A stretch of DNA of 64,000 bases from Ascidiella aspersa. Its lineage: Eukaryota. Positions 1,240-60,167 of this stretch are shown piece after piece. Within the stretch, counting starts at the first letter, position 1. Each line of letters opens with the position of its first letter. The notes beneath the pieces were generated by a model, which was given only the letters and a program-made list of their open reading frames with translations, was not told where the DNA came from and made no database searches. Position numbers and translations under genes: made by a program. Location: NCBI GenBank assembly GCA_963924565.1, contig OZ004613.1, forward strand, positions 21,142,001 through 21,206,000. The letters run 5' to 3'.

Positions 1240-1335
1240 ATCTTTGTGAAGAAGAATGTCTAAATGGCGGTTCATGTGTTGGAACAAACAAGTGTGATTG
1301 TCCTGGAGATTATCATGGCCACCGATGTCTATATA
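1240..1335 (+). CDS. EGF-like domain exon (first visible exon, phase 1-1)
   Basis: After ctacattag the exon reads DLCEEECLNGGSCVGTNKCDCPGDYHGHRCLY, a 6-Cys EGF pattern, followed by a gtagga donor. Not in the ORF track. Confidence 0.8.
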
Positions 1336-4300
1336 GTAGGAACTAGTGTTATATATACTTTTTAGACACAATTCTTTGTACCGGTATTGTACAACATACA
1401 ATTTCTTCCCAGCCGGATACAGCCGTAGTTTGGAATCTGTAATAGATCTTAATGCAAACATCGAGGGTCGGATGTGTTCAATGTTTGGCGCCGGCACTGT
1501 AATAACATTTGATGGACATATCTACGATTTTCCTGGTAGCTGCCAATATGAGTTTGTGTCCTCTGCTGGTTTACCAGATTTTAAGGTACCGGTACAATTA
1601 GTCTGGGTCAATAACGTTTATGGATGTTTACTTTGCAACCTGTATATTATTTTTGATATTTATAACTTCAATATTATCTAAATTTCGAATTTTTGCATTT
1701 ATAATTTAATATACAAAAGCTTTTACTTGTTTTAATGCTGTTTTTTGAAACTTTGATAAACATAATGTTGTGTTTAATTACGTCTATGGTAATTTTACAT
1801 TTATATTTAGGTCTTGGTAAGAAAAAACCCTAACTGCACTGCAAATGACAAGTATTCATATCCTGCAGAGGGTTGTATAAAGTCGGTTACGATTTACATT
1901 GCAGCATCTAATAAAAAAGTGGTGATGACAAATCAACTGGTCAGACTTGACAATGAAATGTAAATTTACTAAGATTTTTCCAAATTTAGTTATGTAGTAA
2001 TACATTGTAATACAAAACAATTTTGTTATCCATTAACTAATTGCTACAGGTCTTTGCCAGATTTTTTGTTTGAAACTGTTATTACTTGTGCATAGGCAAC
2101 TAGGTAAAACACTAATATAGCTTGTTTATTATACCACTCCAACTAATATTAAAAGAAAATGAATGAATGGCTGACGGTAGGAAATGCAAACTATAGTAAA
2201 TCTTATTCAGTTTTCGGTTCTATCTATTATGTTAAGCCTAATATAAAGCATTATTACAAAAGACAGCAGTCCTCAATTTTTAACATAAAAATACTGTGTT
2301 TAGCCAATCATTGCCTTTTGATGGATTTGGAATATTGCTCAGTAGAATTGAACCATTTACAGTATTCACCCTTGGTGACTTGACTGTAAGGTTGGATAGG
2401 TTTATGAGTTCAGTCCATGTTATTCTTGATCCTTTTGACTACTACAATAAAACTGCAGGACTTTGTGGAAACTTTAATGGAATAAGTTCAGATGATCTAG
2501 TGACAAAACAAGGTATTTAACAAACAGTGTTATTTAAGAAAGTGTTCTCATCATTGTTGGTAGCCCCATGAAGAGAATTCATCTCTAGTTTAGATTTACC
2601 GTATTCAGCAATGGCATGTTTTTTAGGTTCGACTGTCACTGGAGATGTAACTGGACATATCGTTGCTAAAACCTGGATTGAAAAGGATGTAAATGAAATT
2701 TGTCATGACATTGATATGGTAAAGGAGAATCTTACCGATTGTAGAAAAAACAGTGTAAGTATAGCTTAATGTATATTTTGGGGTGTCTCTCTTTTTCTAA
2801 TGAAATGTTTTTTAGCATGTAGAAAAGATCTGTAACATTTTGTGGGCATATTTTTCATCATGCCACTCTGTGCTTAATCCAAGCAAATATTACGACCTGT
2901 GCAAGACTGAGTTATGTCGGTGTGATTACATGAAACATGGGGATTGCCAATGCCAGGTTGTCACCCTATATTCAAGAAGTTGTGCTCTCGCTGGAGGGAC
3001 ACCCCCTGACTGGAGATTAGAGAACCAATGCTGTAAGTTCAACAACTCTATATAGTAAAATAAAATGTGTTTTAATTGTAACAAAAGAAAGACTGTATTT
3101 TACTTCACAACTTAGCATTCAATTTTTTAAAAACTAATAATTTCATAGTTTTAAAAAAATTATTAATAAATATATATGTTTTGTGCACGCATTAGCTCAG
3201 TGTATGACAATATACTGTGGTGCAGTGTCATGGGTTGTTATTGTGAATTGACAAATTGATTGTTGTGTTTTAGTAAGACGATGTCCTGCAAAACACAACT
3301 GGCTTGAATGTGGAAAAGAATCTCCACAAACATGTGTAATGCCTCACCTTGTACCAAATCAACTCTGCTTTGATAGATGCCAGTGTCCATATGGTGAGAA
3401 ATTCATTTTTTAGTTTAGCTTTTCACATTGTTTTATGACTAAAAGACTTTTCTTAACTCACTGTTTAGAAATGACTTGACCTTGAATTGAATCGGTTAGA
3501 CAAATAAATTACACTACTTTTTAAATTGAATACATTATAGGAAAATTGGGTTATTTGGCCAATTATTATATATAATAAATTTTAACTTGCTGTTTGTTGT
3601 GTTTTATTGTGTTACATACTTTATGTGAAATATCACCCAGAATATAACACGTTTACCAAGTTTAAAACTTTAACATATATTTTTGGTGATAATGCTATGC
3701 TTGGATTTGACTTACATTGATAATGAATTGGACTAGGATTTGACTTGGTACAAGTTAATTTGCAAATAACTTGATTGGGACTTAAGTCATTTAAAACTGA
3801 CTTGTTTAGAACTCTGGCTCTCAACGACTTTTAGCGTAAAATAATGTTGTGTTTTTGATTTTAGAATGGACACAAAAAAATAGTAGACCTAGGCCTAAGT
3901 GTAGTTTACTTAAATAAGCAACTATGGCAAAATACAATATGAAAAGTGGTCCACCGGATAAAATCAACAAAACAGTTATTTTTCTTTAGAAACGATGAAA
4001 ACCTAAATATGATACACAACAAGCAGTTTACTTATTGTCCGATTAATCACATATTAATATTGTAAACACTTTTTTTGATACAAAAACACTTATTTTGATA
4101 AAAATATTTTTTGATTTGCACATTCTGCAAGATCTTAATATAAAGATAATATCTATAAATAAATTTTCTAAATATAATTACAGTAAGTTTATCCCAGACA
4201 GTAAACGCGCGGCAGCCGCCCAAAGGCCAAAGTAGTTTTAACTTTCTAATGGTCATGGGGTCTGTTGCGTTGAAGGCCACTAGAACACACGGCTTAAGCA

Positions 4301-7300
4301 ACACTTACTCTGGGATATTACAACATCTATTTTGGCTAAAGCTTAATGGTTTAACACAGTGCGTTTGACAAAATTTAGGCAAAGTATACGCAAAACATAT
4401 CGCGCTTGTTGCAGTAGTTTAATTAAGTATTTGTTCGTCTTTACAGGAACGTACGAACATTCTGGTGATTGCACAGTGCTGTCGAACTGTCCATGCATTC
4501 ACAGGGATCACGAATATCGCCCGGGCGAAGTCACCAGCACCTACAACTGCAATAGCTGGTATGGAATTATGACCATGTGTTTTTTATGAATTCGTCGACA
4601 TAATACTCCAAAACAAAAAGCCATCGTAGACTCACCGAAATCCGATCAATGTTGCAAACAGGGCAGGCTAGAACAGTGGTTCTTAAACTGGGGGGCGTGT
4701 GAAGTTCACAAGGGGGCGCGAGAAATGAACAAACTCTGATGAATTATGACTAAACATTAGGGCGAAGTAATATTTCCCTGCTACTAATCCTCGAATTAAA
4801 CATTTGGTATCCAAAAAACAGTATAATCCTGTACTAATGATACGTAAGCCGTAATCGTTGGATAAAAAGCAGCCTAAAAGGGCTAGATCACAGTGGTTAA
4901 CACACATATATGTGCGACTGTGCGTGTATATTTCTTCGATATAATGCTTAATTTTTCAATTTAAAGAGGTCTGTTCGAGCATATACTGTATATATTTTTT
5001 TCGAAATGTTAGCATAAGTAATATGTTACATATACTTTAGGGGTCCTTCGGATTACGATAAAGCGATTATGCATTTTTAATATTGACGTATTTTAGGCTA
5101 AAAAAAAACATAACAAAACTGAATGCGCTGGTTTAAAGTGTAAATGTACAGCAAAATAAAGATAGATGACTTACACGGGTTAATTTAGAGGCCACCAAAC
5201 CAATAACAGCAATCGTAGTTTAAAAAGATACAGGAGAGTGCCTATAGCACAATCATTCTCAGCTATATACCCACACTTTCAACCACTCTGACGTCCCTCT
5301 GACTCCCAAACTCTTGCCGCAGCATCTGTAGCTCAGGCCAGTGGCAGTGCGACCCGTCCCTGTGTCCGGGTACCGCGCACGTGTTCGGCTTTGCCCACTT
5401 CAAGACCTTCGACGACCGTTTTTACACGTTCGACGGCGCGTGCAAGTACGTCTTCGCCAAGGACGACGTGGACAACAGCTTCGTGATGTACCTGGAGGGC
5501 ACCGAGTGCGGTTCGGACCCCGGTGTCACTTGCATCAAGTCCTTCACTGTTCTGCTGACGATTAACGGCCTAGTGCAGGTATTGCTTACGCGGCGAGTTT
5601 GCTTGTGAGGTAAAGCCTGGGCAGTTTACGTCCCCACAATAATTTATTTTTTTCGTTGTCGTAAAGTTTGTGTGTAATCCGCTTTCGTATATATGCTTCA
5701 TGCGGTGCTACAATTATTTACATGAAACCGATAAATACGTTTTCTCTCAATTTTTTATTCACCTTGCACCCGCAACGAAAAATACAGGCCAAGTATATTT
5801 AAATAAAATCAAAATTGTTTTTAAAAATTTAAATATATGTGAAATTAATTTTTTTAATTTTATTAAGTACACATTCGCCAAATGACGGAAGAAAATTCTA
5901 TTTGATTAAACTTGTTAAGCATTAAAATTTAGTGTGATATTAAGACTAAAAAATACGTAGGTTTTTGTTGTATGGGAATTTCTTAGTTGCCATTTTTGTT
6001 TTTGCAGGAAATTACATTTCGGGAAAGTGCGACAGTCAATATCAACAAATATGACGTCAAACTTCCCTATCAATCAGGTACTTATTTTCACTTGCTTCTG
6101 ACTAAGGCGTTTTACTGTGTATCATTCTTTCCAAGTCTACCGAAACATTGCGTTGCTCACATAGTGTGTTCTTAAATAAAACAATAAGTATCGTTTAGTG
6201 TTTCTTGTACACTTGAACCCACAAAGACTTGCACACCTGCAAAATTGTGACTTTAAATGTAACTGGGCCAACGTAAGTCAAACTAGTAATAACTCTCCCA
6301 CGATCTTCTCTTTCAGGGGACGTTTACATTTGCCAAGAGTCGTCGCTTTACATTCACCTCCATCACGGCTATACCGGTATCGATGTACTGTGGAATGGCC
6401 ACGATACACTTTACGTCACTGTGCCTCGGTCATATCAAGGTAAAGTACATTTTATGTAAACATAATTACAAATAGGGAGTTTTGATAGTTGCGTTTTATC
6501 CCGCTGCCGATACTCGATATTTTGGACGAATAGTTTCGCTTTCCGATCCGATAACAAATGACGTCGTTGCTTTCTCCAACAAACAATATAGGTTGGAATT
6601 GAAACATTTAAAGCCCTTTTTAAGGTTTTAAAGCCAAAATTATTTGATTTAAAGTTAAGAAGTTCAGTTATCTTATGTTGTAAACCTATATTATGTTTTC
6701 ATTTTCAAGGCAGAAATCGTTGCAGTGTTACTAATCATGTCTGAGATTCCTATATAATTTTACTATCGAATCTGCACGCCCTAAATTCTGATCTACCACC
6801 CTAAAATCGTACGAATACCGATGCTAACACTTGGCATCGGGAATCGGCTTTTTTGATAACGATATTTTCGGACATAATTAAAAAAAACGGCGAAGATATT
6901 TCGCCGTTTAGTGTAGGCGGTAAAGGTCGTTCGCAACAATTTTTGCAGTTTTATTGGTAATATCTTGTAGTTACGTGGACTAGATTTAGGGGGTCCATGA
7001 AAGCCTAATTGAAATATTAGTGTATAATTAAGAAGTAATCAACTTCTCAAAATAAACAGTTTAATTAAAAACAAAGCGCCTTTCCGTAATGTATCAAGAC
7101 TCATTTCACTTTCAGATTTTAGACCGAAATGTTTTGTAAAGTCTATTTGTATGGTGACGTAAATTTCATGACGTCATCTATAAGGACATTGCAACTCTTT
7201 TAACGAAATTTTTGCAAATAATTTTTTATTGGCCATTTTTTTTCTTCTTTTACCATAGGCAAGCTTCGCGGTCTTGCTGGCAACTACAACGGAAACGCTG

Positions 7301-10300
7301 CCGACGATTTCATCTCTGCTCAGAACATTCTCGAAAGCACCCCGGCTTCTTTCGGCAACTCGTGGAAGCTGAATAACGATTGTAATGACGTCACTACGAT
7401 CAACGTGAACCCGTGTGAATTAAACAGCGATAAAGGTATCAACTCGGTATAGTTGCAAAATACTGATAAATTTTCATCATAAAACATGTAGAAAAGTAAC
7501 CTGCCTTTTTAGTACAACAAAAAAATGTCTAATTACATAGAAAAAAGGCGCCAAACCATTTTTTAATAAAACCTATTTTTTAAAAAGATCTTTTTGAAAA
7601 TTATGAATCAAGGTTTTTACTAGGCCTTCATTGGCCCCAAAAACTAGTACCCCTAAGTTGTCGATCGACCCTAGTTTAAGAACTCACTACACTACGTCAC
7701 TACGGGTTAAAAAGTTAATATACGTCCAATGGTTGTATCAAACCGGTTACCATAAACTTGTTTCAGTCTTGAAAGTTACGGTAACCGGTTTGATTCTGTT
7801 TTTTGAGAAGGACAAGTTACAAAGTAGTTATAACACTTTCGATTTCCAAATAAGGTTGAATTTTATTAACATATGGATTTCCAATAATAATTAACAAAAA
7901 CTCTTAAGCCAAACATCCGATTTAGCTTATTTTGAATTATTTTCAATAGTATTTTTAATAGTATTTGTTTCGGCGTTTTTTCTTCATCAAAATAAAAATG
8001 CAAATCATTTGCAAGAAACAAAATCCACAAAGAATTGAATTTTTAACGTTTTTTGCGCCGAATTTTGAAAACTTCGCTTCTTCGGGAATTCCCCCACGCC
8101 TTTGAAGTAGTGAGCATTTCCTAAAACGCAAGAAACCGCCTTTTCCGTCTTCACGATATTGTTTTGTATTTTGTTTTCGACATTTGCCATCTTATACTTT
8201 TGCATGCAGAGCCGTACGCGCGCGAGGCATGCGGCCAGATCTACGGCACCAAGTTCTCCGAATGCCACAACGACGTGAACCCGGAGCCCTACTACCACAA
8301 CTGCATGTACGAGTTCTGCGAGTGCACCAAGGACATGAACAGCGAGTGCATGTGCGACGCACTGGCCGTCTACGTGCAGAAGTGCGCCTTCCAAGGGGTC
8401 AAACTGAACTGGAGGAAAGAAGGATTCTGCGGTACGCTGAATATAGGCTATGCTATCAGAATACTGTACAGGACACGAGCTTTTTTTTAATCTGTAGTCC
8501 AGTCAATAATCTTCTTGCGTGTTATATAACTGCACCGAGAACTAGTTAGCAACTTTACACTTCTAAGCCTGTGAACCAAATATTTTTTTATAAAGCGCAT
8601 CAGGTCATCTGCGAGCTCTATCTTTTACAACAATTACCATTCTTTTTTTCATAACAAAAGCGATAATGTTGTTAATTATTAATTTGAAACTGTGGTTTAC
8701 CTTTCAAATGATACTATTATTCGTTGATCAATGTCAGTTGCGACCGAACTACTCTCTTATAGAGATAAAATATAATCAAATTTTTTTTGGATGCAATTCC
8801 AAACTATAGTTTAAAAATAAATAACTAACGATCAATTTACATTTTCGTTTAACAACAATCAAATCGTTAACGTTTAAAATGGGACGTAAAAAGGGTCCAT
8901 AGACACAGTTAACCTATTTGTGGAACCCTCTTTTAGAGCTGAATTGCGAAGGAGGGCAAATCTATCAGTCGTGTGGTTCGGGCTGCGGCCACGATTGTCG
9001 ATCTCTTTCTGTTCCCGAAGTGTGTACATTGGACTGCGTGGAAGGATGTAATTGTCCTGATGGAATGTACCTCAATCAACAAGGTAGCATAAGCGCGGAA
9101 TTTAAGGCGTCAAGTGTATTTCAATACATTTGCGATTCTTGAATTTTACGCTTCGAATACAATATTCAATCCGCTTATTTCAAATTTCCCCCTTAACTGT
9201 CACTATTACCTTATACAGCGTTGCCTCAAAGTCTTTGACCATTTGTCGGTCTTTAAATGTCTTTGAATTGAATTGAATTGCGTATTGAAATTTCTTTAGA
9301 AAAATCCTATGTTATTTCAACAGTCTTTGATTTTATTTTATTTATAGTTTTGGCTTCAAGTTTAAACGGTATACCGTTGCAAAACATTTTTTTTACCAAT
9401 TGTTCTTGTGGTAAACATGTCATTTATACTCTTTTTTTATTATTTTAAAAAACGTTGAGCAATTCAATTTAATTCTTTGAAAAGTTATAAATTGTCTTTA
9501 AAAAGTAATTTAATGTGTTAACTTTTTTTTTTGATAAATCCTGTGGCAACGCTGTTATATTGTACGACACGATTTTGTTAGCTAAAAACAGAGTAAGCAT
9601 TTTAAAGAAATGTTTATTGTCGACATGAACATCATACATTACTTTACAGTGTATTTTAATTGTTAGTAAATCTTGAATACTATCAAGCTATACTGAAATA
9701 GTTTCTTTCATTCGCTACAAATGCAAACTAAATCATTAATGTAAGTGAACGACACATAAACTACTTTAGGCGTTTGCGTGGAGGACGTCGACTGTCAATG
9801 TTATCATCTCGGAACTTGGTACGAACCAGGCCAGACCATTCACACACCAGGCATTTTGTGGTGAGTGTCCTTCCTTGCAAAGGATTTCTGTAATACTTTA
9901 ATAGCCTATACTCGTGCACGCTCTTAGGCATCACAGTTATGTGGTACCGGAAACGACGTTATACTGAATTAGGCTCCAATAAATCTGTCCTTTAAAAATT
10001 GTGATAATAGAACATGGAACACGAATGTGTTCGAATGACCAACCGATAAAAACCAACATCTGCTTGTAGGAGTTAAATCAAACGAAACAAAATACTTTCA
10101 ATTTAGAACGTTCGATTATCGTGTTTTCACACATTTTCCAGCTAAGGGCAGTGTTTCTCAGCCTTTTATGGCTAGTGGCACCCCTCAGGAAAAATAAATA
10201 GATTACAGCACCCCGAGAAGATTTTTCCGTAGACAATTCACTATAATGTCACAATAAAAGGCACTGAAAACACGCACATTAACTCTACACAACGTAGGAA

Positions 10301-52300: not shown

Positions 52301-55300
52301 CTACCCGGGTCCGGGACCCTCGAGGAACGTAGAATGGTACGAGAAGGTGGTGAACATGACGACCGAAGAGAACGCCAACCAACACTGCTGCCCGCTGGTG
52401 AAGATCGTCTGTGACGAGACCACGCTACCCCTTTGTCCCGGCTTCAACACGACATGTAGTGTTGACCAGACTAAGGTCGAGCTGAACAGCACGCACGTGT
52501 GTTGCCCGCAGTACGAGTGCCGTTGCCGCGAGTGCTGCGTGGCGCCACCTATCGACCCCTCCCAGGTGTCAGAATGCGAAGAGATTGCATTGGTCCCGAT
52601 CGACAGGAACCCAAACTACGTCTGCTGTCCACAGGAGGAGGTTGTGTGCAGGTCAGATCAAAGCTGTTGCTCTGTGCCGGAATGCCCTACTCACCAGACT
52701 CCCCAAGTGACCAGCGAAATGGACCCCGCCAAGCACTACTGCTGCCCGTTATACGAGTGTGTGTGCAGCGGCTGGTGCGATGCGGGCTACCAGAGCTACG
52801 AGCTGCTCGAGACGCTACTGACACCCGGCCAGGAGCTGGTTTTACACAACGCGGACGACTGCTGTCCAATCTACAGGGTGGTGTGCGCTCCGACTGCTGA
52901 AAACCGTAGCGATTGTGATACTTATAACATCCAGTGTGACAGTCCTTTCGTGCTGCAGCGAAACCTGACTGATTACGGCTGCTGCGGCGTATATCGCTGT
53001 GCGTGTGACGAACAGCTGTGTCCGCCCAAACCAGATTGCGAAGCCCCTAAGGCTCTGAAAGCGCTGGGCTTTGTGGCAGAAGGCTGCTGTCGCCAATACG
53101 GGTGCGAGTGTCCATCCGACAGCAACGTGACATGCATCGGCAGCGAGATCGTAGCCTTTACGGACACGGTCTGCCCAAGAAAGTATTGCCGATGCCCTGA
53201 TTCTCGCGAGTGCCCGGTAAACGCGGCCATTAACTGTACAGCGAAACCGGGATGCAGGGCGACAGTCACACAGCGCGATTCTTGCGGCTGCGTGGTGAGC
53301 GCTTCGTGCTCGCAGGACGAGGCCCTCTGCCCGCCCTTGCCCGAGTGCGGCGATTGCTTTGAGCTGGAACAGCTGCCGGCGCCGCTCAACGTTGGCGACT
53401 GCAACGCGACCTGTTTTAGCTACACTTGTACACGGAAGCTCTGTCCGGCGTCGCAGGTGGTCGAGACGTGCGCCTTGGAGCAGGTGGTGACAGTCAACAG
53501 CGACGATTGGTGCTGCCCCCACGACGAAGTGGTCTGCCTGCCGGGCAGCTGTCCGGAGGTTGAGTGCGGGGCTAACTTCGTGAAAGTAGTTCACGAGGAA
53601 ACAATCGACGCGTCGCACAACTGTACCGGCAACCTGAGCTGCTGTCGACTGGAGGACTGTCTGTGCGACGTCTGCCACCACAACGGCTCTGTTTTCCCGC
53701 TGCACGACACATGGCTGGATGAGTTCGACTTCTGTTTGCGCCACCGCTGCACTGAACAGCGTGGCAGCGACGGCTGCTACACCGTAAACCAGGTTCTGCC
53801 CTACTGCATCTACAACAACGACTCTTACCCAGTGGGTGCCACCATTAACACGCACAACCCGTGCATACGGATGCGCTGCATCGAGCGCGATCACGGCAGC
53901 GGCGTGTGCACGCACGACTTCACCATGGAGTACACTATTTGCCCGGCTCCTCCAGTCTGCGCGTCCTTCTACGTTCCAACCGCTGATTTCGCCCCAACGC
54001 ACTGCTGCGCCAACTACACGTGCGAGTGCGCCAACTGCGGCTTCGGTTACTTGGGCCCGGATACGCTGCGCGTGCTCGAGTGGTACGAGAAGACGCAAAA
54101 CTTCACGCTGCAGGAAAACCCGAATCAGATCTGCTGCCCTCGGCTGCACATTGTCTGCGATGAGTCGGTGCTCGGTCTCTGTCCAGAGGCCGACTTGGTG
54201 TGCGGCTACGGAAAGACTAGAGTCGAGAGCTCGGGCAACCACCCATGCTGTCCAGACGTTTCGTGCGTGTGCGATGAATGTCGCGCCTTCACCAATCCGA
54301 CCCCGGGCGACCTCCACACGTGCGAGAAGATCGTGGGCAAGACAACTGAGGAGAACCCGAACAACGAGTGCTGTCCTGAGTCGAAGATCGTTTGCGAGGA
54401 GGAGGCGTTTTGTTGCCAGGTGCCCGCTTGTGATGAACACGAGGAGCCAGTAAAGACCGGAGCGTTGGACCCGGACACCAACGGATGCTGTCCTCTGTGA
54501 GTTTTATGTTTTTCTTAAAAGAAGCAACTTTTTTTCAAGGCTAAATGGTTGTTTCTTTTTAATTTTTCTACGTGTTAGTGAATGTAACAAATGCTGCAAT
54601 GATCAGGACTTGAATTAAGTCGCTGATTTAAAATTTATTCAATAACCTCAAAGACTTTAATCTATGGTATTTATGCTAATGACCTGAACCAAATTTGTGT
54701 TTTACTTTCACTTGCATACGTTTTAGTTCAGTTGAGGTGGATAAAGTCGGTGTTCAAATACAAATATGTTAGCTTACAGTTTTGTTGTTGGCGTTAGCTG
54801 TACAATACGTAGCCTGGGACGACTTTACGAACTTTATAAAGCAACTTTTTTTGAAATACTAATGATTTGACATCTATTTATTTCGATATAACGATGGCTT
54901 CAACTGGAACCTAACGTGTTCTTTATCAAAAAGGCTCGACTCGATTAACAAAATATTTAAAAATAACACAGAAAAAATTAATTACTGGATAGAAAAAAAA
55001 GAAGTAAAACCACTGCAAAATTTGTTAGTTATGCATTACTGATTGTGCAAAACAATATGACCAACTTTCTGTGTCTAATTTTTTATTAGTACTGTTTAAT
55101 ATAAACTAGATAATCTTAAGTTATATATCAATTTGTATTTTGCCAGGTACGAATGTCAATGCAAGGGAGTGCAAGTACTGGACCACGAGTGCGAGTTTAC
55201 CAACTTCACTTGTCCACTAGGATTTTCCAAGCAGCGCAACAACTCTTGGGACGAGTGTTGTGCAACTTACTACTGTAGATGTGAACAGTGCGCATTGAGA

Positions 55301-58300
55301 GACATTGTTTATCCGGTGGGTCTAAAACAAAAACATTGACAGCAAACACCCAACAGTCAAGGTCTAGAGTCTAGACCAGCGGTTCCCAAACTTTTCTTAA
55401 ATTTTTGCCTGGTGGACACGTTGCAATTATTTTGATATTTCGCGACCCCCCAAAAAATTCAAGGGTCAGTTGACCCATATTTCTTGTGGTACACTAGTGC
55501 AGTGTTTAAAACATTCGCTAAAGCCTAATGTTGAAAAACTTACCACTAAAATTCTCCTTGTGGACCCTCTGAAACTGTTGTACGGACCTTAAGTTAGTCC
55601 GCGGACCCAAGTTTGGTAACAGCTGGTCTAGGCTCTTAGGTGTGAATATTCGAAACCAGGGCTTTCCAGACGTTAGAGTTTGCGACCCCGCTAAACTCCT
55701 TTTTGCGCGACCCTTTACGCTGAACATTAAATAACTGATAATTTTGCTTTTTGTTTTGGCGCCCTTAGTAATGTACAACTCAGTAAGGGTTGTATTGTGC
55801 AGTCGTTTGTAAAGAGTAGTAAGCAAATAAAAAATGTTTTTTAATTTTTAAATTAAAATAATCCATGGGTCACATTTAGGCCGTGGACCTGGATTTGGAC
55901 GACCCTTAAGCAGGTTGTTGAACAGAAAGGGTTTAAATGTATTTGCCTATTAATACATACAGCATGCAGATGTGGGCTTTTCGTTGGTATTTAGTGAAAC
56001 CTTTCTATTCAGATAGGATAATCAGGTTGCAATATATAAAGCCAAATTGTAATAAATTCTCGACAAGCTTCATTAGGTCAGAGTAAAAAAATAACTTTCT
56101 ATTAAAGGTCGGTTCCAGTTGGATAGACATCAACGACCATTGTCTGGTGAAGGAATGCATGCAAATTGGAATAAGCTGTCCGTACATCAATACTAACAGC
56201 AAATACGAGTGCGACATAGTCAATAAAACCGACTGCATCAACGTCAGTATCACATTTTCTATTTTTCTTCGAAATTTTATTAACGCATAGTTGTTAATAC
56301 AACGTTTAGTCGAAACATAGCTAGCTATACCTTTTAGCAATAACCACGTACTTTACCTACTCTCGTTTTTAAGCTTGTTTAGAAACGAATACAACATTTC
56401 GATAAAGTTTACATTGCCTATTTAAAAATCATAAACTACCGATTATCATAATATACGCTTTAAATTGAAATTACTTTGTAGGCCGGGGGACAACTTGTGC
56501 CAACAACCGACACCGAAGGCTGCTGCAAAGAATGTAAGAATTGTTTTAGTACACTTTTATATATATATTGAAAACTAACGGATCCGATACTGAAGGCTTT
56601 ATCAGTGTACACAAATTTATAGCACATAGACTTACACAAGAAAACAAAACAATGTTTTTGAAACAGAAACAGCATCAGTAAACTAAACATCATCGCCAAA
56701 CACTCACAAGTAACTCACAATTTAAGCCTCCTACCGCGACAAGGTAGTAACACTAACTGCCGTAAGAACAATTACAATGTCAAGGCACCATGTGCTCAGT
56801 GACCTTTGACCGCAAGTAACAGAATGCTTACACAATTAAATGGGTCATAAAGCACTTAACATCATAATGCGCTTTAGTAAATTCACTGTTAATCTTAACA
56901 TATATCATATAGATTATATCATAGAACAAGGGCTAAAAAGTTAGACTACGTGCCCAACGTGAGACAATTATGATTTAAGCCGGTGTTTCCCAACCTTTTT
57001 CACATTAGTGCCCCCTTAAGCTTAATATTATTTTATATCGCTCCCCTCATTTTGCTCTTCAGCAAAGTGACATATTAATCGTTTGCTAACATCATATTGT
57101 CTACACTTTTGTTTCGATAAGCTGTCCGCAATATTTTAGGTTGTCTAACATACATCCACTATGGAAATTTATAGATACATTATTTTACCAGGTCATGCCA
57201 TTCATAGAAAAAAAAATCAACTTTCTGCACCAGACTTTAAATCAGGGGTATGCAATTATTTCTAGTCGCGAGCGCCAACCAAACTAAAAAAGGTCTCTGC
57301 GGGACGCACAAAATGTTAAACTAAGAATTGTGTTATTAAAATATTAGAACAACTGGGAATCACGCGGGCCTCGGATTTTTTTCATCCATACTAATACTGA
57401 AAAGTGTAATAAAGCTAGATTGTTTTTAAGTCCGGGCGCACCTGGCGAGCGAAGCGAGCGCGAATTTTGGGGGGTATACCGGCATTTTCTTTCAAAATTT
57501 TTTTTCTTTTCAAATTTTTTTTTTTTTTGTCGTATATAATTTTTGAATACGTTTTCCGTTCGTCCGCGACTCACTTGGCAGCCTTCCACTGCGCAATGGT
57601 AAAGAAGCGCTGATCTAGTCCAAAGACAGAATTAAAACGTAAACAAACTAGACGTAGAAAGATCATTCGCGAGAAGCGCGAACATTTTTTGCCCGTACTA
57701 GGTTAAAATTGTCAAAAAGTATTTGAAATGGACTCGTGTCTAGTTTTCAAAAAAGCTTCGGCCCATGGGCCGTATGTTGGCGAGCCCTGCTTTAAATATA
57801 CAAACATTTTTCCGCGCATAAAACGGTGAAACGCAACAGCTACCAACAACTTTACATAAGAAAGCTAATTATTACGTAACATTAGTCGGGAAACTACTAC
57901 AAGTTCGCAGTACGGAAGTTGCCATTTAAGGTTAAATGTTTCATACAGTATTACAGTGCTGTTTCTTACTATTTTTATGTGAACTTTTATAAATTTTTGC
58001 CATAAGTACTTTCCTGTAACGCCCCCTGATGTGCGTTCGGCGACCCCCAAATGAGACAAAGACCCAAAACGCCCCCTTGTAACTCGCCAACGCCCACAAG
58101 GGGCGGTACCGCCCACGTTGGGAACCTCTGATTTAAGCAAAACACATTGTGGGGTTCTTCAACTTAGTAGCTGTACGGCTGCACCGAAATTACAAAAAAA
58201 CATCATTAATTGCGTTATCTTGGTAACACGTTGCATAGGTGTTACTTCAAGCCATATTGCAAAGCAGGACTGGGGAATCGGTTGAAAATTACCCGAGTCC

Positions 58301-60167
58301 GACTCTGGCTCCGACTATACGGCCTGCATTTCACCCATCTATACGTAACTAAAATAAGGTGGATATTCATAAATCCACTAATACGCCTTATTCATCCAGC
58401 CACAATACATGGTTGGAAAATAATACACCTTTTGCTATTAGACTTTTACAAATGACGATTTTCTAAACGTTTGTACCTGGGTCTTTAATTAAATCTGCGC
58501 AGTGACAAAGCCACTCTGTAATAATAACGTTATTACGGTTGGCACAATTAAAACAACCGCCGTAACAATGATAAATTAATGACGATTCTTAAAGTAATTG
58601 TATACTGTGTGTGTTAGTGTTCACATGTACAATGTACATTTGCAGCAGTTGACACAACCGTCACCAAATAATAGCTTGGATTCAAATACCTTTAAAAAGA
58701 ACAGCAATTTAACTTGACACGGTATAAGTTTAAATTAAAGATTAAATTACTTCTGTAAACTGAAGGCATCGATTATACAGCATTAGCGGTTCAAAAACGT
58801 GAAAATACTTCTTTATGCGATATTTACGTTATCACGGTTTTTATTTTTTTATTTTAGTGGTATACTGATAAAACGTATTGAAATGCATGTAAAAAAAAAC
58901 TCTATGTATGGAACAAATGCATTGATAAGGTATTTTTTCTTGCAACATTTACACGCTACACTACATGTCAAAACGTTGTTGAAGCCCAACTGATTTTTTT
59001 TTGTTATTGTGATAATCTTGTATGTTTTGGTTGGAACTGGATCGGGTGGAAACCGAATAAATTTATGTCGCATTGTTTAGGTAAGATGTGCATAGCGACT
59101 GAGCATCGTGAAATAGTGACTATTTACAACTCCACTACCGGCGTAAATTGCTCGTCGACAGATGAACTTGACCTGCCAATATGCGACGGCGCTTGCACCA
59201 CAACCTCGGAATACAATGTGTACGTTTTTACCGACAGGCATTATATACTAACCATAAGCAATTTTGGTTTCCAATACAATATGTTATTTATTTGTCTTTA
59301 AAAGAGGGCTAATTACGTTTAATCTTTCAAAAAGTTAAAATTGCACATTAGTGTGCGTACATCATTGGTGGAAACAAATGTCACATAATTTTTACCGACA
59401 ATGCGAAATACAAGATAACACTTGGTTTAAACTTCGGAATTGGCCATCACAGCGATTTGTTAAGCTTTTTCCCAAATTCTTTCCTGATAAACCAAAATAC
59501 ACTGCCAATTCCTCCCCAGCAAAATTAACGAAATATTCACATAGTTCTAATTCGACGTGTACTTCTGATAGAAAAACAAAATGAACACCTTTAGTGGTGC
59601 TAAATGATCCATAACGCCTCCTTTCCTTGTTACTTTTGCCATTTTCTGTTTATTTTATCTTCTTTTACATCTTTTCACTGATGATGGCATAAGGAACAGC
59701 AAAATGTCATCCATCAAATATTTTTTGATTGAGTACTAAATATTAACAGTTATATAATTAATATGTAGTTTGGGACACATAAGGTAATTTTGGCCTTCGA
59801 TTTGATGTTAATGTGAAAAATGCCTATATATTTCTAAAGATATTGCATTAGTTTCAAGCATACTGATCGTGTCTGTGTTTCAAGAATCTCGCTTTGGTAA
59901 ACTTTGGTAAACAAAACCTTAGGTTAAAGACACGCCCTTTCCCGCCTGTCTTATAATAATCTTTTGCATGGCATTCCTTTTACTTTTTTTCTCTGCTCCC
60001 TCAGAAATACGGGCGACTACGATTCGGTTTGTCGGTGCTGTAAAGCGCACACGGTTGATCCCCGGACTGCTACGCTCCAGTGCACGGACGGATCGACGCA
60101 TTCTCTCGCCTACGACTTTGTGGTGGAGTGCTCGTGCCACGAGACCGAATGCACGCCGATTCCTTGA
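1240..60167 (+). CDS. Giant gel-forming mucin / von Willebrand factor-like secreted protein (5'-partial, ~90 exons, at least ~8,300 aa; 8 VWD domains, short PTS tract, C-terminal cystine knot)
   Basis: Hand-built GT-AG exon chain with matching phases: 1240-1335, 1413-1585, 1811-1959, 2304-2512, 2627-2754, 2816-3032, 3274-3393, 4447-4558, 5323-5578, 6008-6077, 6317-6439, 7259-7435, 8210-8431, 8937-9083, 9770-9860, 10708-10895, 12099-12225, 12678-12816, 13598-13702, 14655-14843, 15195-15440, 16271-16427, 16905-17070, 17478-17590, 17822-18276, 19084-19297, 20356-20490, 21706-21863, 22445-22603, 23381-23570, 23976-24098, ~25331-25507 (acceptor uncertain), 26012-26119, 26851-26888, 27143-27317; five 10-exon cassettes 27526-54496; then 55147-55315, 56108-56242, 56482-56533, 59081-59219, 60005-60167 (TGA). 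VWD motifs (TFDG...C.Y, GLCGNFNG), C8, TIL and CTCK motifs are visible. No start codon or signal-peptide exon was found in the window. Confidence 0.9.
1413..4558 (+). CDS. D1 assembly exons (VWD1-C8-TIL-E)
   Basis: CSMFGAGTVITFDGHIYDFPGSCQY; KTAGLCGNFNGISSDD; C8 CHSVLNPSKYYDLCKTELCRC...WRLENQC; TIL CPAKHNWLECG...CQCPYG; E module CPCIHRDHEYRPG. Confidence 0.9.
5323..9860 (+). CDS. D2 assembly exons (VWD2-C8-TIL-E)
   Basis: CPGTAHVFGFAHFKTFDDRFYTFDGACKY; KLRGLAGNYNGNAADDF...FGNSWK; C8 CHNDVNPEPYYHNCMYEFCEC; TIL CEGGQIYQSCGSGCGHDC...CVEGCNCPDG. Confidence 0.9.
6980..7185 (-). mobile_element. Inverted partial copy of the MITE at 15787-16138
   Basis: Its reverse complement matches ~15870-16090 (gatgacgtcat.aaattt..gtcac.atacaaat, tgaaagtgaaa, ggctttc.tggac.ccctaaa). 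Confidence 0.6.
9216..9554. mobile_element. MITE with 13-bp TIRs and apparent 5-bp TSD
   Basis: cagcgttgcctca ... tgtggcaacgctg, flanked by ttata on both sides. Confidence 0.65.
10149..10641. mobile_element. hAT-like MITE with a tandemly amplified 3' end
   Basis: Ends cagtgtttctca ... tgagaacactg; agctaagg occurs at 10140-10147 and 10642-10649 (left copy offset by 1 nt). Confidence 0.7.
10414..10641. repeat. 26-bp minisatellite cacccctgttgagaaccactacgcgt, 8 full copies plus 1 partial
   Basis: Unit starts at 10414, 10440 ... 10622; contiguous with no spacers. Confidence 0.95.
10708..17590 (+). CDS. D' and D3 assembly exons (TIL'-E'-VWD3-C8-TIL)
   Basis: CPDGQVYHNC...ECAKTC; CSVSGESHFRSYDYKWFDFAGNCEYILTTDEC; KVCGLCGNYDGDENNDF; DSCGCDAGGDCECFC; CPTMCELYNKNDTCEWHYEVCG. 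These match the MUC2/MUC5/VWF D3 consensus. Confidence 0.92.
11584..11657 (-). pseudogene. tRNA-like element (tRNA pseudogene or tRNA-derived SINE head)
   Basis: Minus strand GCCTGCCTAGCCCAGTTGATAGAGC...GTCGTGGTTTCGAAACTCGCTGCAGGC (74 nt). It has a GCCTGC/GCAGGC acceptor stem, A-box-like and B-box-like motifs, degenerate anticodon and T arms, and a T5 run just downstream. Confidence 0.65.
13004..13381. mobile_element. hAT-like MITE
   Basis: TIRs tagagatagaccgatat / atatcggttgatctcta; perfect 8-bp TSD atcctttg; subterminal ccgata/tatcgg repeats. Confidence 0.85.
15787..16138. mobile_element. hAT-like MITE
   Basis: TIRs caggggttcttaa / ttaagaacctctg; degenerate TSD caatgggt / taataggt. Confidence 0.7.
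17822..18276 (+). CDS. PTS (mucin) exon, Thr-rich
   Basis: Phase-1 entry from 17590 gives TATSVATTRVTTA(TTTQAP)n...FSAVLPQCNNYCVDDEGVHIP, ending at a gtgcgt donor. Confidence 0.85.
17863..18201 (+). repeat. 18-bp coding tandem repeat ACCACCACYCAAGCWCCA, ~19 copies, encoding TTTQAP
   Basis: 18 full units 17863-18186 plus a partial TTTQA. The visible variation is at synonymous third positions in the TTTQAP frame. Confidence 0.95.
19084..27317 (+). CDS. Ten exons of Cys-rich VWC-like / CCPxYxCxC modules between PTS and the first D4
   Basis: DPDVCCDELEC, YGCCPDYEC, NSCCPMYECRC, DPNVCCPEFECRC, DGCCPNYDC, KPCCYEYDC, VCCDVYEC, ECCGDIYTC. Includes a 38-nt micro-exon at 26851-26888. Confidence 0.8.
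19354..19582. mobile_element. hAT-like MITE
   Basis: TIRs cagggccgtattaa / ttaatctggccctg; degenerate TSD gcggtgtc / gtggtttc. A similar end (ttaatccggccctg) occurs near 684-697. Confidence 0.65.
20613..20910. mobile_element. hAT-like MITE (related decayed copy at ~23000-23335)
   Basis: Ends caggg / ccctg; TSD-like gtctagat / gtctggtt; internal cgcgggccggataac and atattcc.cgggccgg motifs shared with 23050-23280. Confidence 0.6.
22719..22933 (+). mobile_element. Internally deleted Tc1/mariner-superfamily element with transposase remnant
   Basis: ~30-bp TIRs (ccaaaagtaggcttacggttat / ataactgcaagcctacttttgg), TA flanks, and internal translation RSPDLTPMDSFFVGVVKNKVYEKKPKTI, the SPDL.P.D catalytic motif region. 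Confidence 0.85.
26478..26763. mobile_element. hAT-like MITE
   Basis: TIRs cagtgcttctcaacct / aggttaagaagcactg; perfect 8-bp TSD gcttaact; cgaccca subterminal repeats. Confidence 0.88.
27464..27488. repeat. (TG)n microsatellite
   Basis: About 12 TG units in the intron just before the cassette array. Confidence 0.9.
27526..31866 (+). repeat. Coding cassette copy 1 (10 exons, 2733 nt, 911 aa: D4-type VWD-C8-TIL plus Cys-rich modules)
   Basis: Exons 27526-27624, 27695-27789, 27995-28150, 28319-28559, 29104-29328, 29468-29668, 29808-29902, 30075-30171, 30275-30379, 30448-31866. Motifs CKCSGLG...FTGNCTYLLTK and SGLCGNCNG. Confidence 0.93.
31950..36249 (+). repeat. Coding cassette copy 2
   Basis: Near-identical exons and introns to copy 1; offset 4424 nt; last exon 34831-36249. 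Confidence 0.93.
36333..40663 (+). repeat. Coding cassette copy 3
   Basis: Near-identical; offset 4383 nt from copy 2; last exon 39245-40663. Confidence 0.93.
40747..45077 (+). repeat. Coding cassette copy 4
   Basis: Near-identical; offset 4414 nt; last exon 43659-45077. Confidence 0.93.
45161..49400 (+). repeat. Coding cassette copy 5 (runs on into the giant exon)
   Basis: Offset 4414 nt. Similarity to copies 1-4 ends at ...CQCPNC (~49400), after which the frame continues GEEYVSK without a splice donor. Confidence 0.93.
48073..54496 (+). CDS. Giant 6,424-nt Cys-rich exon (~2,140 aa)
   Basis: Contains the 2128-aa ORF 48114-54500. Acceptor tccgtag at 48072; donor CT/gtgagt at 54497 is in phase with the 55147 exon (CCPL|YECQC). 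Confidence 0.92.
55147..60167 (+). CDS. Terminal exons: VWC-like module and C-terminal cystine knot (CTCK)
   Basis: YPVGSSWIDINDHCLVKEC...GCCKEC; then KMC...VNCSS...ICDGACTTTSEY...VCRCCK...LQCTDGS...VECSCHETEC, stop TGA at 60165-60167. Shows the CxGxC, CxCC and CxC pattern of mucin/VWF cystine knots. Confidence 0.9.
55377..55625. mobile_element. hAT-like MITE
   Basis: TIRs cagcggttcccaaact / agtttggtaacagctg; TSD gtctagac / gtctaggc. Confidence 0.8.
56981..58130. mobile_element. hAT-like MITE (outer element of a nested pair)
   Basis: Ends cggtgtttcccaac / gttgggaacctctg; perfect TSD atttaagc. Confidence 0.78.
57243..57789. mobile_element. hAT-like MITE nested inside 56981-58130
   Basis: Ends caggg / ccctg; perfect TSD ctttaaat. 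Confidence 0.75.

What the first reader, a model, noticed from the sequence alone, without database searches (positions are those of the whole stretch)
1240..60167. At least ~8,300-aa mucin/VWF-family polymer subunit lengthened by Cys-rich modules and five D4 assemblies instead of a PTS tract
Seen: one continuous frame over ~90 exons with EGF-D1-D2-D'D3, only ~150 aa of PTS, about 6,800 aa of Cys-rich sequence including five D4-type VWD-C8-TIL assemblies, and a cystine knot. Established: gel-forming mucins (MUC2/5AC/5B) have D1-D2-D'D3, a long PTS region, one D4 and a CK; VWF has VWA domains and one D4. Inference: this is an atypical architecture, possibly a long disulfide-stiffened, N-glycosylated fibre that polymerises end to end. 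Candidate roles are a mucus net, adhesive, clot or extracellular scaffold.
Basis: partly seen in the sequence, partly recalled or inferred. Interest (0 to 1): 0.88.

Follow-up and report, generated by a model that had tools for sequence, protein, structure and literature searches.

The report
Giant sea-squirt mucin/VWF-like polymer gene
This window holds one very large sea-squirt gene (about 8,100-8,300 amino acids) of the mucin/von Willebrand factor family. Its long middle is built from cysteine-rich modules and five near-identical repeated cassettes instead of a sugar-coated mucin tract; the architecture is real and apparently undescribed, but its tissue and function are unknown.

Summary
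A splice-aware model of the + strand gives 89 GT-AG exons, one open frame and 8,145 codons from 1240 to the stop at 60165-60167.

- **N-terminal part:** exon-by-exon searches confirm an EGF-like exon, D1, D2, D' and D3. D3 keeps both cysteines that VWF and MUC2 use for head-to-head disulfides.
- **PTS tract:** about 190 aa.
- **C-terminus:** a VWC domain followed by a cystine knot.
- **Five internal D assemblies:** they are real but need two corrections. Pfam cannot see them; only a local profile-profile alignment to D2/D3 does (96.5%, E 8e-10). They are "D4" by position only. They sit in a 4.4-kb genomic tandem repeat, and each cassette has 10 exons and exactly 911 codons in phase 1-1. Exons of copies 1-4 differ by 0.55-1.2% and introns by 1.7-4.0%, with pN/pS 0.12-0.31.
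- **Cysteine-rich bulk:** Pfam finds nothing. It has only 11 relatives among 1.84 billion representative proteins; the named ones are ascidian. One domain per ~560-aa super-repeat folds like a VWF C domain.
- **Paralogue:** a tandem gene with the same EGF-to-knot layout lies just upstream.

No RNA evidence could be obtained. One-gene status rests on a VWC domain split by the intron after the PTS exon, on the paralogue, and on truncated ortholog models. I rate it a new variant of a known kind.

The parts
1240..1335 (+). EGF-like exon; starts in phase 1, so at least one upstream exon is missing
   Evidence: Pfam EGF_2 E 7e-4, below the cut-off. The same exon opens the upstream paralogue, 70% aa identity.
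1413..4558 (+). D1 assembly: VWD1 about 1413-2754, C8-1 2816-3032, TIL-1/E-1 3274-4558
   Evidence: Pfam VWD E 1.3e-6, C8 E 1.7e-15, TIL E 1.3e-3 on single exons.
5332..9860 (+). D2 assembly: VWD2 5332-7435, C8-2 8210-8431, TIL-2 8937-9083, E-2 9770-9860
   Evidence: Pfam VWD E 3.5e-11 and 2e-3, C8 E 1e-20, TIL E 6.4e-11.
10708..12225 (+). D' (TIL'-E')
   Evidence: The exon at 12101-12223 aligns best with VWF 808-847 (E 3.7e-10). The tail of the exon at 10709-10894 aligns with VWF TIL' in 2mhp (E 0.02).
12678..17052 (+). D3 assembly: VWD3 12678-15440, C8-3 16271-16427, TIL-3 16905-17052; keeps both inter-chain cysteines
   Evidence: Pfam hits. The exon carrying the end of VWD3 matches MUC5B D3 best (72.9 bits; VWF D3 42.8). 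The C8-3 exon aligns with VWF 1076-1126, and our Cys sits where the C1099A chain 7kwo has Ala. The TIL-3 exon matches MUC2/MUC5B D3, with the CEWHY motif Cys conserved.
17478..18276 (+). PTS tract of about 190 aa in two exons, with an 18-bp x 18.9 tandem repeat at 17861-18200. The last 14 codons begin a VWC domain.
   Evidence: Tandem repeat; translation; 56% S+T+P.
19084..27317 (+). Unique Cys-rich region of about 510 aa in 11 exons: the remainder of the split VWC, then six-Cys modules ending in CCxxxxCxC
   Evidence: Model. Residues 6-44 of Clavelina P0002 match 19180-19296. Ciona P0015 starts inside this VWC.
27526..45077 (+). Cassettes 1-4, starting at 27526, 31950, 36333 and 40747. Each has 10 exons, 2,733 nt = 911 codons, phase 1-1: a divergent VWD-C8-TIL-E of 438 aa plus a 473-aa Cys-rich exon.
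   Evidence: Genomic repeat. Exon model. hhalign to D2/D3: 96.5%, E 8e-10, 333 columns. Exon versus intron divergence. pN/pS 0.12-0.31 and no Cys changed.
45161..48004 (+). D assembly of cassette 5 (nine exons)
   Evidence: Same as cassettes 1-4.
48073..54496 (+). Giant exon of 6,424 nt (2,141 codons, 294 Cys). The first ~449 aa match the cassette exon; three further super-repeats of about 560 aa follow, each with one VWC-fold domain plus small Cys modules.
   Evidence: Translation. Internal period. Pfam blank. AF2 pLDDT 75, with VWF C4 at Z 6.1 / 78 aa / 3.7 A and Foldseek probability 1.0.
55147..56533 (+). C-terminal VWC domain in three exons, split by an intron at ..YP|VG..
   Evidence: Colinear with P0001 residues 2205-2304 and with P0002; splice sites.
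59081..60167 (+). Cystine knot in two exons, with the stop at 60165-60167
   Evidence: 63-64% identical to the Phallusia ortholog's knot. The last exon matches Norrin (E 5e-3) and VWF CK 4nt5 (E 0.05) with all Cys aligned. The Clavelina ortholog's knot matches 4nt5 at E 5e-7.

Best explanation
The interval is one protein-coding gene for a secreted giant glycoprotein of the VWF / gel-forming-mucin superfamily. It belongs to a subfamily found so far only in ascidians.

Proposed mechanism (inferred from family knowledge and conserved residues, not shown):
- Two chains join tail to tail through the C-terminal cystine knot.
- Dimers then join head to head through disulfides in D3, assisted by D1-D2 as in VWF and mucins. 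The product is a linear, covalently linked polymer.
- In place of a long O-glycosylated PTS tract, the spacer between the two polymerising ends is about 6,700 aa of disulfide-bonded modules carrying about 150 N-glycosylation sequons. The modules are VWC-fold domains, short six- to ten-Cys modules, and five divergent D assemblies.
- The subunit should therefore be a long beaded rod rather than a bottle-brush.

The five D-plus-Cys-array cassettes arose by recent tandem duplication of a frame-neutral 911-codon unit. They are kept alike by unequal crossing-over or gene conversion while under purifying selection, so subunit length is probably variable between lineages and perhaps between individuals.
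For: One frame, 89 GT-AG exons, no internal stop.

Domain evidence:
- D1, D2, D' and D3 are confirmed exon by exon.
- The D3 cysteines aligned with VWF C1099 and with the VWF C1142 / MUC2 C1130 position are present.
- Cystine knot: the ortholog matches VWF CK at E 5e-7, and the cysteines of our last exon all align.
- Knot homodimer model of the Phallusia ortholog: score 0.66, best of 3 controls 0.00. Runs agree in at least 91% of contacts and partner pLDDT is at least 86. The mark was reached by 21 of 30 solved one-chain pairs and 0 of 23 single chains. On eukaryotes it was reached by 17 of 29, but by only 1 of 7 without an older solved relative, so the pass may be from memory.

Continuity across the PTS:
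- The PTS exon ends with the first two Cys of a VWC domain (..GVHIP) and the next exon continues it (VGQVW..C....C).
- This intron has the same position and phase as the intron in the C-terminal VWC, which ortholog proteins read across.
- All four annotated orthologs (Ciona, Clavelina, Styela, Phallusia) start without a signal peptide, in the middle of a module. They are truncated models, not separate secreted proteins.
- A tandem paralogue upstream repeats the whole order from the EGF exon to the knot and stop.

Cassettes and Cys-rich region:
- Exons are about 3 times more conserved than introns, with no exon indels among copies 1-4, no Cys changes, and pN/pS 0.12-0.31.
- The cassette D aligns end to end with D2/D3.
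- The VWC fold is found in the Cys-rich region.
Against: - There is no transcript evidence at all.
- The signal peptide is not established.
- RefSeq models in Ciona and Clavelina begin just after the PTS position. This could reflect a real internal promoter rather than truncation.
- Copy number of a 22-kb array of units 96-99% identical could be misassembled. Cassettes are frame-neutral, so they could also be skipped in splicing.
- Most of the Cys-rich sequence (the small modules) has no significant structural match, so 'rod of VWC-like beads' is partly extrapolation.
- Polymerisation is inferred from conserved residues and a model that may be reciting the solved VWF knot dimer.
Confidence: 0.7

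Rival explanations
1. There are two transcription units. An upstream short mucin-like gene covers EGF, D1, D2, D'D3 and the PTS. A separate downstream gene covers the Cys-rich arrays, the cassettes and the cystine knot.
For: The Ciona (P0015) and Clavelina (P0002) RefSeq models both start at the position matching window 19.1-19.3 kb, just after the PTS. No RNA data were available to me.
Against: - A VWC domain is split by the intron 18277-19083, at the same position and phase as a verified VWC intron.
- The supposed downstream proteins would start mid-domain without a signal peptide.
- The PTS exon has a usable GT donor in frame and no terminal stop is needed.
- The paralogue keeps the same D3 -> mini-PTS -> VWC order.
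Confidence: 0.1
2. The gene is real, but the number of cassettes in the protein is not five. Either the array is mis-sized in the assembly or polymorphic, or some frame-neutral cassettes are skipped by splicing.
For: The units are 4.4 kb and 96-99% identical, and each is exactly 911 codons in phase 1-1. Copy number differs among species: none in the Ciona model, one in Styela, two in Clavelina, one in the paralogue. Lang et al. note that near-identical VWD repeats cause assembly problems in FCGBP (PMC4948705).
Against: - Every copy carries its own substitutions and intron indels (spacings 4383 versus 4414; 15-33 exon differences among copies 1-4), as expected of distinct loci.
- Introns between and within cassettes are short, with ordinary splice sites.
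- The coding constraint on each copy argues that each is translated.
Confidence: 0.2
3. It is a kielin/chordin-like (KCP/BMPER-type) extracellular BMP modulator, as the automatic name of the Styela ortholog suggests. On this reading it is not a structural polymer.
For: The Styela ortholog XP_039251056.1 is named kielin/chordin-like. The protein has many VWC-like modules followed by VWD-C8-TIL units, and the nearest ESM-Atlas cluster is VWC/VWC2L (score 0.79, a lead only).
Against: KCP and BMPER lack D1-D2-D'D3 and a cystine knot and are 10 times smaller. This protein has both polymerisation ends, with their key cysteines. Only 11 sequence relatives exist, none a vertebrate KCP.
Confidence: 0.03
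4. It is the ascidian SCO-spondin, the subunit of Reissner's fibre.
For: It is a giant non-PTS protein with N-terminal VWD assemblies and a C-terminal VWC plus knot. Lang et al. found invertebrate mucin-like proteins close to SCO-spondins (PMC4948705).
Against: No exon contains LDL-receptor class A, thrombospondin type 1, EMI or FA58C domains, and these define SCO-spondin. The D3 exons score best against MUC5B/MUC5AC/MUC2.
Confidence: 0.03

Closest known systems
Von Willebrand factor (human VWF)
   Same: D1-D2-D'D3 head and a VWC-plus-cystine-knot tail. The cysteines at the VWF C1099 and C1142 positions and the knot CxCC motif are conserved. A stem of C-type domains precedes the knot, and one domain per super-repeat superposes on VWF C4 (Z 6.1, 78 aa, 3.7 A).
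   Different: No VWA domains. No furin site (no R-x-K/R-R anywhere). No RGD. About three times longer. Five extra D assemblies and thousands of residues of Cys modules, against six C domains and one D4 in VWF.
Gel-forming mucins MUC5B / MUC5AC / MUC2
   Same: These are the best sequence matches for the D3 exons (MUC5B 72.9 bits, MUC5AC 62.5 bits, MUC2 34.5 bits). They share the head and tail modules, a PTS tract follows D3, and there is no propeptide cleavage motif.
   Different: The PTS is about 190 aa (2.3% of the protein) rather than thousands of residues. No CysD (Mucin2_WxxW) domain. The central region is disulfide-rich and carries N-glycosylation sequons.
Ci-GFM1 of Ciona (Nakashima et al. 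2018, PMC6109156)
   Same: An ascidian member of the same superfamily with D1-D2-D'D3, a tiny PTS (50 aa), D4, VWC and a knot.
   Different: Ci-GFM1 is 2,880 aa and carries chitin-binding and fibronectin type II domains. None of these is found here. It has no repeated cassettes or giant Cys-rich exon.
SCO-spondin and alpha-ovomucin (non-PTS relatives; PMC4948705)
   Same: They are precedents for VWD/knot proteins whose length comes from Cys-rich modules, or which lack a PTS. SCO-spondin forms a thread.
   Different: SCO-spondin is defined by LDLa and TSP1 repeats, which are absent here. Alpha-ovomucin is small and has no module arrays.
FCGBP and zonadhesin
   Same: Both have tandem, nearly identical VWD-C8-TIL units within one gene. 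For FCGBP this is stated in PMC4948705; for mouse zonadhesin it is from my own knowledge.
   Different: They lack the D1-D2-D'D3 plus knot polymerisation pair. FCGBP VWDs carry GDPH autocleavage motifs, and none occurs here.
Annotated ascidian orthologs
   Same: Four models: Phallusia CAB3264414.1, Clavelina XP_076818448.1, Styela XP_039251056.1 and Ciona XP_026695156.1. They are 36-60% identical and colinear from the Cys arrays to the knot.
   Different: All are N-terminally truncated models of 2,284-3,613 aa with automatic names (notch-like, kielin/chordin-like, uncharacterized). None shows the D1-D3 head, and cassette number is 0-2.

Membership tests
VWF / gel-forming mucin superfamily (disulfide-polymerising D1-D2-D'D3 ... 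CK glycoproteins) | Three N-terminal VWD-C8-TIL assemblies with a D' between D2 and D3 | tested here: met
   Pfam on single exons; PDB alignments for D' and D3.
VWF / gel-forming mucin superfamily (disulfide-polymerising D1-D2-D'D3 ... CK glycoproteins) | D3 cysteines that make inter-chain disulfides (VWF C1099 and C1142; MUC2 C1088 and C1130) | tested here: met
   The C8-3 exon aligns with VWF 1076-1126 with Cys at 1099, where the C1099A chain 7kwo shows Ala. The TIL-3 exon aligns with MUC2/MUC5B with the CEWHY Cys conserved. That these residues are the inter-chain ones is from the literature and my own knowledge.
VWF / gel-forming mucin superfamily (disulfide-polymerising D1-D2-D'D3 ... CK glycoproteins) | C-terminal cystine knot able to dimerise | tested here: met
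   The ortholog's knot matches VWF CK at E 5e-7. All Cys of the last exon align. Dimer model score 0.66 with best control 0.00, possibly from memory.
VWF / gel-forming mucin superfamily (disulfide-polymerising D1-D2-D'D3 ... CK glycoproteins) | Signal peptide / secretion | tested here: inconclusive
   There is only a candidate: a 46-nt first exon 3.6 kb upstream of the window, with a hydrophobic 15-mer and a GTAAGT donor in phase 1. The paralogue has a candidate of the same length.
Gel-forming mucin proper (MUC2/5AC/5B/6/19) | Long central PTS domain(s) dominating the protein | tested here: not met
   The PTS is about 190 aa of 8,145.
Gel-forming mucin proper (MUC2/5AC/5B/6/19) | CysD (Mucin2_WxxW) domains, as in the MUC2/MUC5 types | tested here: not met
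   No Pfam hit in any exon.
Von Willebrand factor | VWA domains A1-A3 between D3 and D4 | tested here: not met
   No VWA hit in any exon.
Von Willebrand factor | Furin-type propeptide cleavage site after D2 | tested here: not met
   R-x-K/R-R does not occur anywhere in the model.
SCO-spondin | LDL-receptor class A and thrombospondin type 1 repeats | tested here: not met
   No such Pfam hits.
Otogelin | AbfB domain | tested here: not met
   No such Pfam hit.
Kielin/chordin-like protein (KCP) / BMPER | An array of VWC domains ending in a single VWD-C8-TIL, without D1-D2-D'D3 and without a cystine knot | tested here: not met
   The head and the knot are both present.
   The cassette D aligns over 333 columns with D2/D3, including an E-like tail, and is preceded by a six-Cys module. 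No D4 reference sequence was available for a direct comparison. The domain composition of VWF D4 is from my own knowledge.
Ci-GFM1-type ascidian gut mucin | Chitin-binding and fibronectin type II domains | tested here: not met
   No such Pfam hits; architecture from PMC6109156.

The most novel reading that the evidence does not exclude
This gene and its tandem paralogue encode the structural filaments of the ascidian pharyngeal mucus net, the regular rectangular filter secreted by the endostyle. I found no molecular identification of that net's proteins in the papers I read. A rod-like, covalently polymerising subunit whose length is set by a variable number of 911-aa cassettes would then be a genetic determinant of mesh geometry. 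The only link so far is indirect: 'VWF' genes mark the glandular endostyle zones 2 and 4 in Ciona (PMC13635237; PMC12212465, citing Sasaki 2003 and Yamagishi 2022). Whether those markers are orthologs of this gene was not testable here.
Probability: 0.12. Interest if true: 0.8.

Novelty: new variant of a known kind. Interest (0 to 1): 0.5.

Why it matters
It shows a third way of lengthening the ancient mucin/VWF polymer subunit. Mucins use a PTS bottle-brush and VWF uses VWA domains. Here the spacer is thousands of residues of disulfide-bonded VWC-like modules plus a frame-neutral, recently amplified D-assembly cassette.

It gives a full-length template for a gene that public annotations in four ascidians hold only as truncated, misnamed fragments. 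It also supplies a concrete candidate for ascidian extracellular fibres (mucus net, gut membrane, tunic or clot) that can be tested by in situ hybridisation and proteomics.

The cassette array is a natural experiment on how subunit length affects a disulfide-linked polymer.

Tried and rejected
- **Pfam:** blank on the giant exon and the cassette exon, on the cassette D exons and on the whole Clavelina and Phallusia orthologs.
- **PDB by sequence:** phmmer of the Clavelina ortholog found only the knot.
- **Small Cys modules folded alone** (model mded2655ab748, pLDDT 84): no significant match. The best was the MUC2 C-terminal region at Z 3.4; the best Foldseek E-value was 0.015. They stay unclassified.
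- **ESM Atlas:** the nearest cluster was VWC/VWC2L at 0.79, a lead only.
- **Literature:** searches for vWFL or VWF-like endostyle genes, and for kielin with Styela, returned nothing usable. The Styela thyroglobulin-like paper (PMC12992692) concerns a different protein.
- **Readings rejected on missing defining domains:** KCP/BMPER, SCO-spondin, otogelin and Ci-GFM1.
- **GC-rich giant exon:** exon GC is 0.44-0.54 throughout the gene against about 0.33 in introns, so this is not an anomaly.
- **Pfam Cementoin hit on the PTS exon** (E 3e-25): I take it as an artefact of hexapeptide periodicity.
- **Joined model:** the joined spliced protein was never handed to any search, fold or complex tool. 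All such calls used single exons by reference or natural database proteins.
- **Assembly gap:** the N run at 60453-60898 was left untouched.

Full report
**What the window is.** It is G000:C7:21142001-21206000 of a 308.6-Mb, 75-contig genome. Earlier notes of this scan call the genome a probable sea squirt. The best protein matches here are all ascidian: Phallusia 60%, Clavelina 47%, Styela and Ciona 36-38%.

**Gene model.** No spliced aligner was available. I wrote a dynamic-programming exon finder using codon log-odds, splice-site matrices re-trained on the window, and a small bonus for tblastn hits of the fetched orthologs.
- The strict run gives 89 exons, all GT-AG, with median intron 198 nt and intron phases 54/28/6 for phases 1/0/2.
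- It yields 8,145 codons and 988 Cys, ending at the stop at 60165-60167. A looser run gave 8,300-8,474 codons.
- The strict model omits some VWD1 exons (1413-1591 is a clear VWD start). It contains one 57-nt exon (11656-11712) that lies in a dispersed repeat and is probably false.
- The joined protein exists only in my scripts. There it was used for counting and for local alignments against this genome's own flanks and the fetched proteins. It was not sent to any search, fold or complex tool; those received single exons by reference or natural database proteins.

**Head of the protein.** Exon-by-exon Pfam finds the following.

| Assembly | VWD | C8 | TIL |
|---|---|---|---|
| D1 | 1415-1591 | 2816-3031 | 3276-3392 |
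| D2 | 5333-5578, 7261-7434 | 8212-8430 | 8939-9082 |
| D3 | 12679-12816, 15195-15440 | 16271-16426 | 16907-17050 |

- D' is shown by PDB alignments: 12101-12223 matches VWF 808-847 best (E 3.7e-10), and 10709-10894 matches VWF TIL' weakly.
- The D3 exons score higher against gel-forming mucins than against VWF. The comparisons are MUC5B 72.9 versus VWF 42.8 bits, MUC5AC 62.5 versus 49.6, and MUC2 34.5 versus 14.7.
- In the C8-3 exon our ..GGDCECFC.. aligns with VWF 1092-1101. The second Cys falls on residue 1099, exactly where the engineered C1099A chain 7kwo shows Ala.
- In the TIL-3 exon ..NDTCEWHYEVC.. aligns with MUC2 ..PHECEWHYEPC... By my knowledge of the VWF and MUC2 literature, this is the VWF C1142 / MUC2 C1130 position.
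- Both head-to-head disulfide cysteines are thus kept.
- There is no furin motif, no GDPH and no RGD anywhere.

**N-terminus.** The first recognisable exon (1240-1335) is EGF-like (E 7e-4, below Pfam's cut-off) and starts in phase 1.
- The only candidate first exon lies 3.6 kb upstream of the window: ATG, a hydrophobic 15-mer, and a GTAAGT donor in phase 1, 46 nt in all.
- The paralogue has a candidate of identical length and phase.
- I regard this as unproven.

**PTS.** Exons 17478-17590 and 17822-18276 encode about 190 aa with 56% S+T+P. They include 19 TTTQAP units from an 18-bp tandem repeat. The paralogue has only about 15 such residues, so the tract is a young expansion.

**Is it one gene across the PTS?** This is the weakest joint, because the Ciona and Clavelina RefSeq models start just after it. 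Three observations argue for continuity.
1. The PTS exon ends ..C-NNY-C-VDDEGVHIP and the next exon begins VGQVW-FSDL-C-QTQE-C. Together they make the N-terminal half of a VWC domain of the same pattern as the intra-exon VWCs of the giant exon.
   - The intron sits at the same place and phase (P|V, phase 0) as the intron in the C-terminal VWC (..IVYP|VGSSW..).
   - The Phallusia and Clavelina proteins read straight across that C-terminal intron.
2. The ortholog models begin mid-module with no signal peptide, as truncated models do.
3. A tandem paralogue on the same strand runs from an EGF exon at 21071462 to a knot with stop at about 21135070, which is 6.9 kb before the window.
   - In between it has D1, D2, D'D3, a mini-PTS and the same VWC.
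   - These are followed by giant open exons (one of 1,876 codons) and one D cassette.
   - The unit EGF...knot is therefore what was duplicated.
   - Nothing similar lies within 14 kb downstream.

**The five cassettes.** A 4,383-4,414-bp genomic unit is repeated five times from about 27.5 to 49.5 kb.
- Each unit has ten exons of 99, 95, 156, 241, 225, 201, 95, 97, 105 and 1,419 nt. The total is 2,733 nt = 911 codons, entering and leaving in phase 1. In the fifth unit the last exon runs on into the 6,424-nt giant exon.
- Copies 1-4 differ by 0.55-1.2% in exons and 1.7-4.0% in introns, with no exon indels.
- pN/pS is 0.12-0.31 over all ten copy pairs; among copies 1-4, 20 of 910 residues vary and no cysteine changes.
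- These are distinct, constrained copies rather than an obvious assembly duplication. Copy number still needs long-read confirmation.
- The first 438 aa of each unit give no Pfam hit apart from a weak TIL match. The contiguous cassettes of the Clavelina protein give none either, and phmmer against the PDB finds nothing.
- A local hhalign of {cassette D, Clavelina D} against {D2, D3} aligns 333 columns end to end. It runs from the VWD start motif through GLCGNCNG, C8 and TIL to an E-like tail, at 96.5% probability and E 8e-10. Smith-Waterman z-scores are 8.3-8.6 against shuffles.
- They are therefore divergent D assemblies. 'D4' is justified by position only.
- Cassette number differs between lineages: two in the Clavelina model (its D parts about 97% identical over 361 aa), one in Styela, none in the Ciona model, and one in the paralogue. 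This points to repeated, lineage-specific amplification or homogenisation.

**The cysteine-rich bulk.**
- It is Pfam-blank.
- A full HMMER pass over 1.84 billion representative proteins finds only 11 relatives at E <= 1e-3. All the named ones are ascidian and the longest is 3,613 aa. No full-length model of this gene is in that collection.
- AlphaFold2 on one super-repeat (10-row alignment, pLDDT 75) gives an all-beta beaded chain.
- Foldseek finds NEL/NELL2, VWF C4 (probability 1.0, TM 0.59 on the target), VWF C6, fibronectin type I pairs and the MUC2 C-terminus.
- VIA-align places VWF C4 (Z 6.1, 78 aa, 3.7 A), collagen IIA VWC (Z 5.4) and CCN3 VWC (Z 5.2) on model residues 216-341. That is the 123-aa segment with the C-x2-C...G...W motif.
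- The remaining six- to ten-Cys modules were folded alone at pLDDT 84. They have no significant solved counterpart; the best is the MUC2 C-terminal region at Z 3.4.
- I therefore call the region an array of VWC domains interspersed with unclassified short disulfide modules. There are 59 CC-x(2-8)-C-x-C motifs in the protein.
- Sequon density is 20-24 per 1,000 aa here against 4 per 1,000 in D1-D3, about 150 sites in all.

**Tail.** Exons 55147-55315, 56108-56242 and 56482-56533 form a VWC. Exons 59081-59219 and 60005-60167 form the knot.
- They are colinear with the orthologs at 56-69% identity.
- The Clavelina knot matches VWF CK 4nt5 at E 5e-7.
- Our last exon aligns all its Cys, including CxCC and the final C-x-C-x4-C.
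- The homodimer model of the Phallusia knot scored 0.66 with best of 3 controls 0.00. Contacts agreed in at least 91% between runs and partner pLDDT was at least 86.
- That mark was reached by 21 of 30 solved one-chain pairs and 0 of 23 single chains. On eukaryotes it was reached by 17 of 29, but by only 1 of 7 without an older solved relative. Because the VWF knot dimer is solved, this pass may be memory; it shows likeness, not binding.

**Comparison with what is known.**
- Lang et al. counted 17 multi-VWD proteins in Ciona and note non-PTS relatives (alpha-ovomucin, SCO-spondin). They list the defining domains of VWF (VWA), SCO-spondin (LDLa), otogelin (AbfB) and zonadhesin (MAM) (PMC4948705). 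None of these occurs in any exon here.
- Nakashima et al. described Ci-GFM1 (2,880 aa, 50-aa PTS, chitin-binding domains) (PMC6109156). This gene is a different one.
- 'VWF' genes are used as markers of endostyle zones 2/4 in Ciona (PMC13635237, PMC12212465). I could not test whether they are this gene's orthologs.
- I found no description of this architecture or of any of its orthologs.

**Verdict.**
- The gene is best filed as a new, ascidian-specific variant within the VWF/gel-forming-mucin superfamily.
- Its function and even its transcript structure remain to be shown.

Noticed in passing
G000:C7:21071462-21135070 (loci L006, L008-L015), upstream of the window, + strand: A tandem paralogue of the whole gene. 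Its order is EGF exon, D1, D2, D'D3, a mini-PTS of about 15 aa, VWC, giant open exons (one of 1,876 codons), one D cassette, VWC, and a cystine knot with stop. The Cys arrays are about 33-42% identical to this gene and the head exons 45-75%.
   Followed up: partly
window 16885-17050 versus G000:C7:21090196-21090355: The TIL-3 exon is 100% identical in protein and 94.6% in DNA between the two paralogues, while other head exons are 74-83% identical in DNA. This may be a gene-conversion patch or unusually strong constraint around the inter-chain cysteine.
   Followed up: partly
window 17824-18276: The TTTQAP repeat exon matches Pfam Cementoin, the trappin transglutaminase-substrate repeat, at E 3e-25 in four stretches. 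This is probably an artefact of hexapeptide periodicity, but the glutamine in each unit could be a cross-linking site.
   Followed up: no
window 10412-10637: A 26-bp tandem repeat, 8.7 copies at 98% identity, lies inside the intron between the D2 E-module exon and the D' exon.
   Followed up: no
window 60342-61017: TG-rich microsatellites flank the assembly gap (N run 60453-60898) about 175 nt after the stop codon, so the 3' UTR and poly(A) site cannot be read here. The gap was left untouched.
   Followed up: no
P0002 (Clavelina XP_076818448.1), residues about 212-572 and 807-1167: The two D assemblies of the Clavelina ortholog are about 97% identical to each other but only about 44% identical to those of this genome. 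Cassettes are therefore amplified or homogenised independently in different ascidian lineages.
   Followed up: partly
G000:C7:21138358-21138403 and 21068339-21068384: The candidate first exons of the two paralogues are both exactly 46 nt from the ATG to a GTAAGT donor in phase 1, and each encodes a short hydrophobic peptide. Their sequences are not obviously alike.
   Followed up: partly
window 6974-7177, 15787-16138, 11532-11712: Intronic dispersed repeats have several copies, in both orientations, in the introns of the upstream paralogue. One of them overlaps a 57-nt exon of my model, which is therefore probably false.
   Followed up: partly
window 52842-54440, minus strand: A 532-codon open frame lies antisense to the GC-rich end of the giant exon. 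It is most likely a by-product of the codon composition of the sense strand.
   Followed up: no
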